Origin: Scyliorhinus canicula
Taxonomy: Eukaryota
Direction of reading: 5' to 3'
Length of the DNA: 64,000 nucleotides
Assembly: GCF_902713615.1 (NCBI RefSeq)
Contig: NC_052172.1
Location: forward strand, 19,377,327-19,441,326
Made by a program: the position numbers and the translations under genes. The notes beneath the pieces are model-generated. The model was not told where the DNA came from. It saw only the letters and a list, made by a program, of their open reading frames with translations, and did no database searches. This document shows, piece after piece, positions 53,408-54,787 of the stretch. How positions within the stretch are numbered: position 1 is the first letter of the stretch; every line of letters begins with the position of its first letter.

Positions 53408-54787
53408 CAGTGGCGTGCAGAGGGGGGGGCCGACGGTGCGTTGGCCCCGGGCATCCATTGGATGGGGGCATCAATCAGAGGCTATTGCTCTCCCCAATGT
53501 CACCCAGATGCCTAAATTTTTCCACCTGAATTTAACAAATTGTTTTGCTAAGGGGGGAGGGGGGGGGGGGCGTCACAATCAAATCCAGTGACTACCGACA
53601 TGTACCTTGTGTCAGGGTGAGGTGACTGCGCTCCCAGACTCCCCCCGCGGTGGGGAAACCGCTCTATCCGCCGCGCGGGCGGGCGGCCCGGGACTGCGCA
53701 TGTCCAAGGGAGGGGGAGCTCCTCACATGCAGGGAAAGGCCCCGCCCCCTGATCTGCGTGCTGAGATGTTGACCAATGAAAAAAGATTGAGGACCGGAGG
53801 GACTGTGGTTCTCCAGCCAATCAGAGCGCGGGCTTTGTGTGAGTGATAATTGAGCTTTCACACCGACGGAATCTTCCTCCTGTCTCCAACATCTGTGAGT
53901 AAAACACTTTTCTTTTCTCCTCCTTTCCATTTCTTTTTTCATTCTGACCATCAATTGGTCACTTGCAGCAACTGAAGGGAAAGGAAGTGAATCCAGGGAG
54001 GGTTCAGACTCTGGAAAGCTTGGCCCAGGTCTCTCTCTTAAAAATATTGACATCCTTTGCTCCCTCAGTTTGACACATGAAATGAAATGAAAATCGCTTA
54101 TTGTCAGGGGCTGTTTAGCACAGGGCTACATTGCTGGCTTTGAAAGCAGACCAAGGCAAGCCAGCAGCACGATTCGATTCCTGTAACAGCCTCCCCAAAC
54201 AGGCGCCGGAATGTGGCGAATGCGGAATGTGACAATAAGCGATTTTCATTTCATAAGTAGGCTTCAAATGAAGTTACTGTGAAAAGCCCCTAGTATTGAC
54301 CAGGACACGGGGGTAACTCCCCTGCTCTTCTTCAAAATAGTGGCTGTGGGATCTTCAACATCCACCTAATAGGGACAGACAGAGCCTCAGTTTAACAACT
54401 TATTTGAAAGAAGGCTGTTCTGACAGTGCAGCACTCCCTCAGTTCTGAGTGTGATTAGGGATTCAGTCATTCACCCCAACTGCTGAGACACCAGCAAGTT
54501 CACACTGGGGAGAGACCATTCACTGCTCTCTGCACACAGCGGTTTAGAACATCATCTACACTGAAATGAAAATCACTTATTGTCACAAGTAGGCTTCACT
54601 GAAGTTACTGTGAAAAGCCCCTAGTCGCCACATTCCGGCGCCTGTTCAGGAGGCTGGTACGGGAAGTTGTATTCAAAATGTTTTCCTTTCTCATAATATT
54701 TCTCAGTATATTAGGCCTTATACTTGAGTCTTTGGGGCATACAATCAAGATTTGCCCCGGGCATCACCAGACCTCTGCACGCCACTG
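53408..54787. mobile_element. Non-autonomous hAT transposon carrying promoter/exon-like cargo, inserted in an HE1 SINE
   Basis: Perfect 16-bp TIR CAGTGGCGTGCAGAGG; 8-bp TSD ATCCAAGG (53400-53407, 54788-54795); subterminal GCCCCGGGCATC at both ends; host SINE halves at 53161-53399 and 54796-54865. Confidence 0.93.
53640..53830 (+). promoter_or_regulatory. CpG-rich promoter-like segment inside the hAT element
   Basis: TGCGCATG 53695-53702, CCCCGCCCC 53740-53748, CCAAT at 53773 and 53817. Confidence 0.65.

What the first reader, a model, noticed from the sequence alone, without database searches (positions are those of the whole stretch)
53408..54787. Pack-like hAT transposon carrying a promoter-exon-intron-exon cassette into MAP3K10 intron 1
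Seen: a 1380-bp element with perfect 16-bp TIRs and an exact 8-bp TSD splits an HE1 SINE, so it moved as one unit. It has no transposase. It holds a CpG-rich segment with NRF1-like, GC-box and two CCAAT sites, then an exon ending CATCT|GTGAGT, a 74-nt intron (53895-53968, with CTGAC branch-like site, long pyrimidine tract and TTGCAG), a second exon-like piece and old SINE fragments. Known: 8-bp TSDs with CAG termini mark hAT elements, and gene-fragment capture (Pack-MULE/Pack-TIR) is well described in plants but rarely in vertebrates. Inference: the retained intron indicates DNA-level capture of a host gene 5' end, making this a mobile promoter in the same sense as MAP3K10. It could drive an isoform lacking the SH3 exon. 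From memory the cargo resembles 5' ends repeated in shark C2H2 zinc-finger gene clusters; this is unverified.
Basis: partly seen in the sequence, partly recalled or inferred. Interest (0 to 1): 0.8.

Follow-up and report, generated by a model that had tools for sequence, protein, structure and literature searches.

The report
Gene-fragment-carrying hAT transposon in MLK intron
A 1.4-kb cut-and-paste (hAT) transposon without a transposase really did jump into a SINE in the first intron of a catshark MLK-type kinase gene, carrying a promoter-like CpG island and a zinc-finger remnant, but nothing shows that it works as a promoter.

Summary
Perfect 16-bp TIRs (53408-53423 / 54772-54787), an exact 8-bp TSD (ATCCAAGG) and a split SINE mark a true hAT-type insertion. 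It has no transposase. It lies about 10.4 kb downstream of, and in the same sense as, exon 1 of an MLK-family MAP3K gene.

The TIR family is a real mobile one. Non-vertebrate animal contigs hold at least 120 copies with the same ends, about 30 of them with distinct 8-bp TSDs showing the hAT target bias.

Catshark read depth suggests the CpG-rich cargo and other interior parts exist in tens of near-identical copies, in two species. The 3' arm is about 50 times more abundant than the cargo.

This fits a cargo derived from a zinc-finger gene. An earlier scan note (s1-278439) describes a 2.5-kb hAT with ZNF pieces in 130-210 copies, probably the same family.

The "mobile promoter" reading is not supported:
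- RNA contigs run unspliced through the "promoter" into the "intron".
- Raw reads are near zero on exon 1.
- The "intron plus exon 2" belongs to a repeat 20-80 times more abundant.
- MLK exon 1 also encodes half the kinase domain.

The donor locus and autonomous partner were not found. Verdict: a new member of a known kind (multicopy Pack-hAT).

The parts
53400..53407 (.). left copy of the 8-bp target-site duplication, ATCCAAGG
   Evidence: identical to 54788-54795
53408..53423 (+). 5' terminal inverted repeat, CAGTGGCGTGCAGAGG
   Evidence: 16/16 complementary to 54772-54787
53408..53479 (+). conserved 5' arm: TIR, G-run and subterminal motifs GCCCCGGGCATC (53444-53455) and GGGGGCATC (53465-53473)
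   Evidence: median 75% identity to the left 72 nt of the invertebrate copies; identity is at random level beyond that
53551..53576 (.). G-rich run between the arm and the cargo; length-polymorphic (11-nt deletion in an organism-B contig)
   Evidence: table 4 and record 10
53577..53887 (+). CpG-rich, promoter-like cargo: NRF1-like half site, GC-box, CCAAT boxes at 53773 and 53817, and the putative non-coding exon 1
   Evidence: Exact DNA contigs have depth 172-340, against 5-27 for diverged single contigs, and occur in two species. It is unique within the window.
53895..53968 (+). proposed 74-nt intron (GTGAGT...CTGAC...TTGCAG); splicing not shown
   Evidence: for the motifs, RNA contig records 19 and 20 cross both ends unspliced
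53888..54076 (+). segment of a much more abundant repeat (the 'intron plus exon 2'); most genomic copies differ at 53921, 53938, 53946, 53950 and 54004
   Evidence: depth 8,260 then 23,958, against 290-1,288 to its left; record 4 loses homology left of 53888; no copy elsewhere in the window
54077..54294 (.). fold-back of SINE-type 5' ends, with 25-nt perfect inverted arms at 54082-54106 and 54230-54254
   Evidence: joints 54103>54251 and similar
54295..54450 (+). fragment of another interspersed repeat; its tail equals the 33-bp satellite unit at 38490-39772
   Evidence: The exact contig 54340-54428 has depth 253, the same as the cargo.
54459..54566 (+). decayed C2H2 zinc-finger remnant (GFSHSPQLLRHQQVHTGERPFT...RFRTSSTLK), in the same sense as the promoter-like part
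   Evidence: zf-C2H2, E=0.0026; best relatives are elasmobranch poly-ZNF proteins; it is the only HTGERP linker in the 64-kb window
54562..54665 (+). SINE-type repeat fragment
   Evidence: 90-95% identity to at least 6 window copies
54670..54787 (+). 3' arm shared with a far more abundant set of elements; the last 58 nt are conserved with the invertebrate copies (motifs GGGGCATACAA and GCCCCGGGCATC)
   Evidence: depth 16,760 in X1; records 16 and 24 diverge upstream of 54670; median 85% identity.
54772..54787 (-). 3' terminal inverted repeat
54788..54795 (.). right copy of the target-site duplication, ATCCAAGG
53160..54876 (.). host SINE copy split by the insertion (53160-53407 and 54796-54876)
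   Evidence: the rejoined flanks align across the junction with 25 other copies
42189..42974 (+). exon 1 of the MLK-family MAP3K host gene (SH3 plus the kinase N-terminal half, ending HRDLKSSN|GTAAGT); context only

Best explanation
This is a non-autonomous hAT transposon. A hAT transposase supplied in trans recognises the 16-bp TIRs and the subterminal GCCCCGGGCATC / GGGGGCATC motifs. It cut the element out and pasted it into a SINE in intron 1 of an MLK-family MAP3K gene, duplicating 8 bp. Those steps are shown by the anatomy and by relatives with the same ends. The stretch between its short arms (about 53480-54669) is not transposase sequence. It is a mosaic of host-type DNA: a CpG-island-like promoter region with a short non-coding exon-like piece, a piece of a high-copy repeat, SINE fragments and a decayed C2H2 finger in the same sense. 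I infer that an abundant hAT MITE family picked up DNA from a zinc-finger gene locus, by gap-repair or template switching as proposed for Pack-TIRs. I also infer that this composite then amplified to tens or hundreds of copies in catsharks. The copy in the window would be a shortened, SINE-riddled member. Here it is most likely a passive intronic passenger. It is transcribed only as part of longer unspliced RNA, and no promoter or splicing activity is shown.
For: The TIR, the TSD and the rejoinable SINE show an insertion. There is no transposase. The same ends occur in at least 120 copies in animal contigs. Of 45 TIR pairs, about 30 have 8-bp TSDs that are all different, with T at position 2 in 18 of 30 and A at position 7 in 15 of 30. 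Those copies have unrelated interiors. Catshark DNA contigs that match 53564-53902 and 54340-54428 exactly are short and deep (172-340, against 5-27 for diverged single contigs). Such contigs are also present in a second species. The 3' arm reaches depth 16,760. The cargo's words occur in many DNA and RNA runs of three organisms. The finger remnant is of the elasmobranch poly-ZNF type and in the same sense. An earlier follow-up on other DNA of this genome reports a 2.5-kb hAT with ZNF-gene pieces in 130-210 copies (an AI note, and the family identity was not checked). Multicopy Pack-hAT elements carrying 5' UTR DNA are documented in Xenopus and alligator (PMC8277862).
Against: No second catshark copy could be read end to end, so 'TIR-bounded copies with different TSDs that share this cargo' rests only on depth. 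The tool itself warns that depth is not a copy number. No donor locus was found. The promoter-like part lies directly behind the 5' arm and in the 5'-to-3' sense, which is also where an autonomous hAT keeps its own promoter and 5' UTR. The finger remnant is only about 1.3 fingers long, and it could be an unrelated scrap.
Confidence: 0.55

Rival explanations
1. Ds-like deletion derivative. The CpG-rich promoter-like region and exon 1 are the autonomous hAT's own transposase promoter and 5' UTR, kept after an internal deletion. The rest of the interior came from later insertions and filler.
For: The promoter-like region lies immediately behind the 5' arm and points inwards. Depth at 53467-53547 (668) is about the same as that of the cargo (290-500), so the two are linked in all copies. 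No host parental gene was identified.
Against: No trace of a transposase, BED or hATC domain was found in any frame. The interior holds a host-type C2H2 finger in the same sense. Copies with the same arms in another animal have entirely different sequence at this position. The arms are about 50 times more abundant than the cargo, as expected if a minority subfamily gained extra DNA.
Confidence: 0.2
2. The element is an active mobile promoter whose exon 1 splices over the 74-nt intron and on to MAP3K10 exon 2, giving an N-terminally truncated isoform.
For: The orientation matches the host gene. CpG-island composition and CCAAT/GC boxes are present. The donor GTGAGT is strong and the acceptor is plausible. 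Words from the cargo occur in many RNA runs.
Against: An RNA contig covers 53572-53910 at even depth (9.2), including at least 250 nt upstream of any plausible start site, and runs into the intron unspliced. Another contig spans the whole intron. Other interior parts have similar RNA depth (6-8.5), which suggests read-through or intronic RNA. Raw reads give 0-0.8x on 53467-53871. No 53894/53969 joint was listed. Exon 2 of the host gene lies outside the window, so that junction could not be examined. The product would lack the kinase N-lobe and the HRD motif.
Confidence: 0.05
3. Chance gene-like look. The 'exon-intron-exon' is not one gene's structure. The donor sits at the seam between the moderate-copy CpG-rich piece and an unrelated high-copy repeat, for example a 5'-truncated retroposon whose abundance rises towards its 3' end. 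On this reading the cargo is a patchwork of repeats.
For: Depth steps from 1,288 to 8,260 to 23,958 across 53791-54033. A diverged contig loses homology left of 53888, 6 nt before the donor. About 60% of the interior is made of recognisable interspersed-repeat fragments.
Against: In the stranded run, the exon-2 bin is read 12:1 in the sense that the ZNF-coding bin (46:1) calibrates as + RNA. The intron bin is about 5 times lower. That pattern fits a real exon of an expressed multigene family, although one expressed locus could produce it. A GTGAGT within a few nt of a seam is unlikely by chance (about 1%, my estimate).
Confidence: 0.2

Closest known systems
Multicopy Pack-TIR / Pack-hAT elements of vertebrates (for example Pack-hAT-N8_XT carrying 291 bp of the CAPSL 5' UTR in Xenopus tropicalis; Tan et al. 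2021, PMC8277862)
   Same: A transposase-less hAT element with short arms and 8-bp TSDs. Its interior is host-derived non-coding 5'-end DNA, and it is present in more than one copy.
   Different: The parental locus is not identified here. The cargo is a larger mosaic (about 1.2 kb, with SINE scraps and a finger remnant). Copy number appears to be tens or more, against 3 copies in the frog case; that survey found only 4 multicopy cases among 370.
Maize Ac/Ds: Ds-del and composite Ds elements
   Same: A non-autonomous hAT with conserved TIRs and subterminal motifs, mobilised in trans, with a heterogeneous interior.
   Different: No autonomous partner is known here, and no transposase remnant is present. 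The interior holds host-type sequence.
Plant Pack-MULE / Pack-TYPE elements
   Same: Capture and amplification of gene fragments, including promoters and 5' exons, between TIRs.
   Different: The superfamily differs (hAT with 8-bp TSD and 16-bp TIR, against MULE with 9-bp TSD and long TIRs), and the host is a vertebrate.
Other Pack-hAT elements noted by this scan in the same catshark genome (ZNF pieces s1-278439; CFTR exon 1 s1-246648 and s1-249153; HNRNPU s1-216878 and s1-219842)
   Same: The same genome and the same kind of element. The ZNF-carrying one is probably the parent form of this shorter copy.

Membership tests
hAT superfamily, non-autonomous element | 8-bp target-site duplication | tested here: met
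   ATCCAAGG lies on both sides. Relatives with the same ends have 8-bp TSDs in about 30 copies.
hAT superfamily, non-autonomous element | Short TIRs with 5'-CAG...CTG-3' termini | tested here: met
   16-bp perfect TIR, CAGTGGCGTGCAGAGG
hAT superfamily, non-autonomous element | Target preference nTnnnnAn | tested here: met
   In 30 relatives, T is at position 2 in 18 of 30 and A at position 7 in 15 of 30. The window's TSD has T at position 2 but G at position 7.
hAT superfamily, non-autonomous element | An autonomous partner encoding a BED/DDE/hATC transposase with the same ends | not testable with these tools
   None was found in the window or in the 120 fetched loci. The shark assembly cannot be searched here.
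Pack-TIR (Pack-hAT) gene-fragment carrier | TIR-bounded element without a transposase, whose interior is not TE-derived family sequence | tested here: met
   No transposase is present. The interior is unrelated to the interiors of copies that share the arms.
Pack-TIR (Pack-hAT) gene-fragment carrier | Cargo traceable to a parental host locus outside any TE | tested here: inconclusive
   Only a host-type C2H2 finger remnant was found. No donor locus was found: the look-up of encoding contigs gives no DNA for shark assemblies, and ORF look-ups found nothing.
Pack-TIR (Pack-hAT) gene-fragment carrier | Multicopy: several TIR-bounded copies with the same cargo and different TSDs | tested here: inconclusive
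   Short exact contigs with depth 172-340, against 5-27 for single contigs, occur in two species, and interior segments share that depth. No second copy was read end to end.
Alternative promoter / first exon of the host MLK gene | Transcripts that start inside the element and splice 53894>53969 and on to host exon 2 | tested here: not met
   RNA contigs are unspliced and cover the 'promoter'. Raw reads are near zero on exon 1. No such joint is among those listed (the table was truncated, and only two RNA runs were examined).
Ds-like internal-deletion derivative | Remnants of the transposase gene next to the arms | tested here: not met
   Pfam finds nothing in any frame of 45 aa or more. A purely non-coding 5' UTR remnant cannot be excluded.

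The most novel reading that the evidence does not exclude
A hAT family whose cis-acting ends are shared almost unchanged with a marine invertebrate, which would be compatible with horizontal transfer, captured the CpG-island promoter, 5' exon and fingers of a catshark zinc-finger gene. It then spread them to about 100 or more sites, seeding promoter and splice-site modules into host introns such as MLK intron 1. That would make DNA transposition a contributor to the expansion and rewiring of zinc-finger genes in sharks.
Probability: 0.2. Interest if true: 0.7.

Novelty: new member of a known kind. Interest (0 to 1): 0.4.

Why it matters
Gene-fragment capture by DNA transposons is well known in plants. 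In vertebrates it has been seen mostly as single-copy relics: a survey of 100 animal genomes found only four multicopy cases (PMC8277862). A catshark hAT subfamily carrying a promoter-like CpG island and zinc-finger gene scraps in tens to hundreds of copies would be an unusually successful vertebrate example. It could also be a source of dispersed promoters and splice sites. This particular copy shows no sign of function, so its value is as one more documented member, with mapped arms and cis motifs, and not as a regulatory innovation of the MLK gene.

Tried and rejected
1. I tried to fetch other copies by exact look-up of spurious ORFs inside the element and by a homology search with the 129-aa ORF. 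Nothing was on record.

2. I used the finger remnant to reach shark ZNF loci and compare their 5' ends.

3. An Rfam scan of 52800-55400, prompted by hammerhead ribozymes noted near ZNF promoters elsewhere in this genome, gave no match. ARAGORN found no tRNA.

4. A search of the scan's notes by sequence came back blank.

5. I looked for an autonomous partner in the 120 invertebrate loci. I found only piggyBac-like, LINE and host ORFs.

6. The 34-mer of the 3' end gave no match in viral contigs.

7. A literature look-up of the JGI sample ids found nothing.

8. I rejected reading the joint 53387>54798 in the RNA and DNA runs as an empty site. It carries 33 other letters of SINE consensus, so it comes from paralogous SINE copies.

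9. I rejected the near-TIR at 41334 (2 mismatches) as a chance match.

Full report
**What is in the sequence**

The stretch 53408-54787 (1,380 bp) begins with CAGTGGCGTGCAGAGG and ends with its exact reverse complement. This is a 16/16 match and the only exact pair in the 64-kb window. It is flanked on both sides by ATCCAAGG, at 53400-53407 and 54788-54795. I removed the element and one copy of the 8-mer and joined the flanks. The joined flanks then align colinearly across the junction with 25 other copies of a SINE in the same window, the best at 80% over 348 nt. The element is therefore an insertion that duplicated 8 bp of a pre-existing SINE. By my arithmetic, such a TIR-plus-TSD configuration is expected by chance about 1e-6 times per window. 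I could not verify the SINE's name 'HE1', and ARAGORN finds no tRNA there.

**Host gene context**

The ORF at 42189-42983 (+) encodes an SH3 domain followed by protein-kinase profile positions 4-128 of 263. It ends ...HRDLKSSN at a GTAAGT donor at about 42974. Its best solved relatives are the kinase domains of MAP3K9 and MLK4 and the SH3 domains of MAP3K10 and MAP3K11. The gene is thus an MLK-family MAP3K. MAP3K10 is plausible but not proven. No DFG-containing exon lies downstream in the window. The element therefore sits in a first intron of more than 21 kb, about 10.4 kb from exon 1 and in the same sense. An RNA starting in this intron would lack the SH3 domain, the ATP-binding lysine and the HRD motif. 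It could not encode an 'SH3-less' active kinase.

**Anatomy of the element**

The map below comes from a self-comparison with the window, read depth and a comparison with foreign copies.

| Coordinates | Content |
|---|---|
| 53408-53479 | 5' arm |
| 53551-53576 | G-run, length-polymorphic |
| 53577-53887 | CpG-rich piece, unique in the window (GC 0.60-0.65, CpG o/e 0.73-0.77), with a GC-box, two CCAAT boxes and a short non-coding 'exon' |
| 53888-54076 | piece of a much more abundant repeat; holds the proposed 74-nt intron and 'exon 2' |
| 54077-54294 | fold-back of SINE-type 5' ends |
| 54295-54450 | fragment of another interspersed repeat; its tail is the unit of the 33-bp satellite at 38490-39772 |
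| 54459-54566 | decayed C2H2 finger (see below) |
| 54562-54665 | another SINE-type fragment |
| 54670-54787 | 3' arm |

The finger remnant reads GFSHSPQLLRHQQVHTGERPFT..RFRTSSTLK on the + strand. It contains the only HTGERP linker in the window. Its best relatives among 1.8 billion proteins are elasmobranch poly-ZNF proteins. No open frame of 45 aa or more matches any Pfam family, so there is no transposase.

**The TIR family is real and of hAT type**

An exact 26-mer from the 3' end occurs in at least 120 contigs of JGI 'metagenomes'. These contigs are animal DNA, not shark DNA:
- They hold none of the ubiquitous shark SINEs.
- They carry ORC4, a protein kinase and a LINE endonuclease.
- Their U2AF2 exon is only 78-79% identical to both vertebrate and scallop orthologues.

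In these contigs I found 45 TIR pairs bounding elements of 1.0-8 kb. About 30 have 8-bp TSDs with at most one mismatch, and all the TSDs differ. Position 2 is T in 18 of 30 and position 7 is A in 15 of 30, which is the hAT target pattern nTnnnnAn.

The catshark element shares with them only the left 72 nt and the right 58 nt. Median identity is 75% on the left and 85% on the right, against 78% and 90% among the foreign copies themselves. Beyond the arms, identity falls to random level, 46-50%. The shared arms include two subterminal motifs, GCCCCGGGCATC and GGGGGCATC(C)AA. Each occurs in both arms, in direct orientation, and they are probably transposase-binding sites (inference). No autonomous copy was found.

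**Copy number and linkage in catsharks**

Only one read-laying run was allowed, and I used it on 52900-55300. The DNA contigs of organism A that match the cargo exactly are short and deep:

| Contig | Depth |
|---|---|
| 53564-53674 | 172 |
| 53716-53827 | 340 |
| 53814-53902 | 222 |
| 54340-54428 | 253 |

Diverged single contigs have depth 5-27, and a probably unique flank bin has depth 12. A second species (organism B) shows the same pattern, 37-53 against 4-6. I read this as tens of near-identical copies, perhaps up to about 100, in which the CpG-rich piece and at least one other interior piece travel together. The tool warns that summed depth is not a copy number, and no second copy could be read end to end.

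The 3' arm (54682-54762) has depth 16,760 in organism A, about 50 times that of the cargo. Two contigs share 54670-54787 but differ upstream of it. The cargo-bearing elements are therefore a minority subfamily of a large MITE-like family.

This agrees with an earlier follow-up of this scan on other DNA of the same genome (s1-278439). That note describes a 2.5-kb hAT with pieces of a host ZNF gene in 130-210 copies. It is probably the parent form of the copy here, but I could not compare the sequences.

**The 'promoter-exon-intron-exon' claim**

The motifs are present, but the functional reading is not supported.
- In RNA run X14, a 342-nt contig covers 53572-53910 colinearly. It includes at least 250 nt upstream of any plausible start site and 16 nt of the 'intron'.
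- A second contig, from another copy, spans the whole intron (53885-54013).
- Depth there (9.2) is about the same as on other interior parts (6-8.5), as expected for read-through or intronic RNA.
- In the raw oligo-dT run X23, depth is 0-0.8 on 53467-53871.
- No 53894/53969 joint is among the joints listed, although that table was truncated.

Depth rises from 1,288 (53791-53871) to 8,260 and then 23,958 (53953-54033). Most genomic copies differ from the window at five positions, and one diverged contig loses homology just left of 53888. So 'intron plus exon 2' belongs to a family 20-80 times more abundant than 'promoter plus exon 1', and the proposed donor sits at that seam.

Two readings remain. 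One is that this abundant family is a common ZNF-gene 5' module. In its favour, the exon-2 bin is read 12:1 in the sense that the ZNF-coding bin (46:1) calibrates as + RNA, and the intron bin is about 5 times lower. The other is that it is an unrelated repeat and the gene-like look is partly accidental. A single expressed paralogue could produce the strand bias.

**Best explanation and rivals**

I commit to a Pack-type hAT element (confidence 0.55). A member of an abundant hAT MITE family acquired host DNA from a zinc-finger gene region, and the composite was mobilised in trans and amplified. This copy would be a shortened, repeat-riddled passenger in the MLK intron.

Rivals:
- The left part is the autonomous element's own promoter and 5' UTR (0.2). 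This is not excluded, because no autonomous copy or donor locus could be searched.
- The gene-like structure is a chance seam of repeats (0.2).
- It is a working mobile promoter for a truncated MLK isoform (0.05).

**Comparison with what is known**

Tan et al. 2021 (PMC8277862) found 370 Pack-TIRs in 100 animal genomes. Of these, 208 were bounded by hAT elements and only four were multicopy. One was a frog hAT-N8_XT carrying 291 bp of a 5' UTR in three copies. The present element is of that kind, so it is not a new category. What stands out is the apparent copy number and the richness of such elements in this catshark genome. The scan has already noted hAT elements with ZNF, CFTR and HNRNPU cargo.

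**Limits**

The shark assembly could not be searched at DNA level. The donor locus, the autonomous partner, the empty site in related species and the identity of the invertebrate remain open. The decisive computations are listed separately.

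Noticed in passing
L001-L120 (for example L043:4315-6668, L002:11834-13347, L118:2259-6465), compared with window 53408-53479 and 54730-54787: A non-autonomous hAT family occurs in at least 120 contigs of JGI 'metagenomes' (IMG 3300001463 and others). 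These contigs are non-vertebrate animal host DNA. The family shares the catshark element's TIR and subterminal motifs, and the shark arms fall within the spread of the invertebrate copies (75%/85% against 78%/90% median identity). The interiors are unrelated. This could reflect horizontal transfer or strong cis constraint. The organism was not identified.
   Followed up: partly
window 42189-42974 (+): MLK exon 1 encodes the SH3 domain and also the N-terminal half of the kinase domain, up to HRDLKSSN. Any transcript initiated in intron 1 would be kinase-dead, not merely SH3-less.
   Followed up: yes
window 38490-39772: A satellite of about 39 units of 33 bp gives long spurious ORFs on both strands. 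Its unit equals the tail of an interspersed repeat also present inside the element at 54419-54448.
   Followed up: partly
window 54082-54254: A fold-back made of two inverted SINE-type 5' ends has 25-nt perfect arms with 123 nt between them. Reads and contigs of all four runs show related copies that lack the 147-150 nt between the arms.
   Followed up: no
window 53000-53088 and 53293-53381: Two SINE copies lie in inverted orientation just upstream of the insertion. Their 89-nt arms are 94% complementary and 204 nt apart, forming a potential long hairpin in the MLK pre-mRNA.
   Followed up: no
window 17344-19726 and 45844-47212: Two long tandem-repeat arrays give ORFs of 250-490 aa in several frames on both strands. 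They are not genes.
   Followed up: no
L109:4856-5608 (-): PiggyBac-like transposase ORF fragments are nested inside a 4.9-kb copy of the invertebrate hAT family.
   Followed up: no
Read laying record 16 (organism B) at window 54670-54787: A 312-nt contig of depth 170 contains the 3' arm exactly. It then continues for 149 nt beyond the TIR end with sequence unlike the window. This suggests a repeated context in which the element end abuts a fixed sequence, such as a nested or composite arrangement.
   Followed up: no
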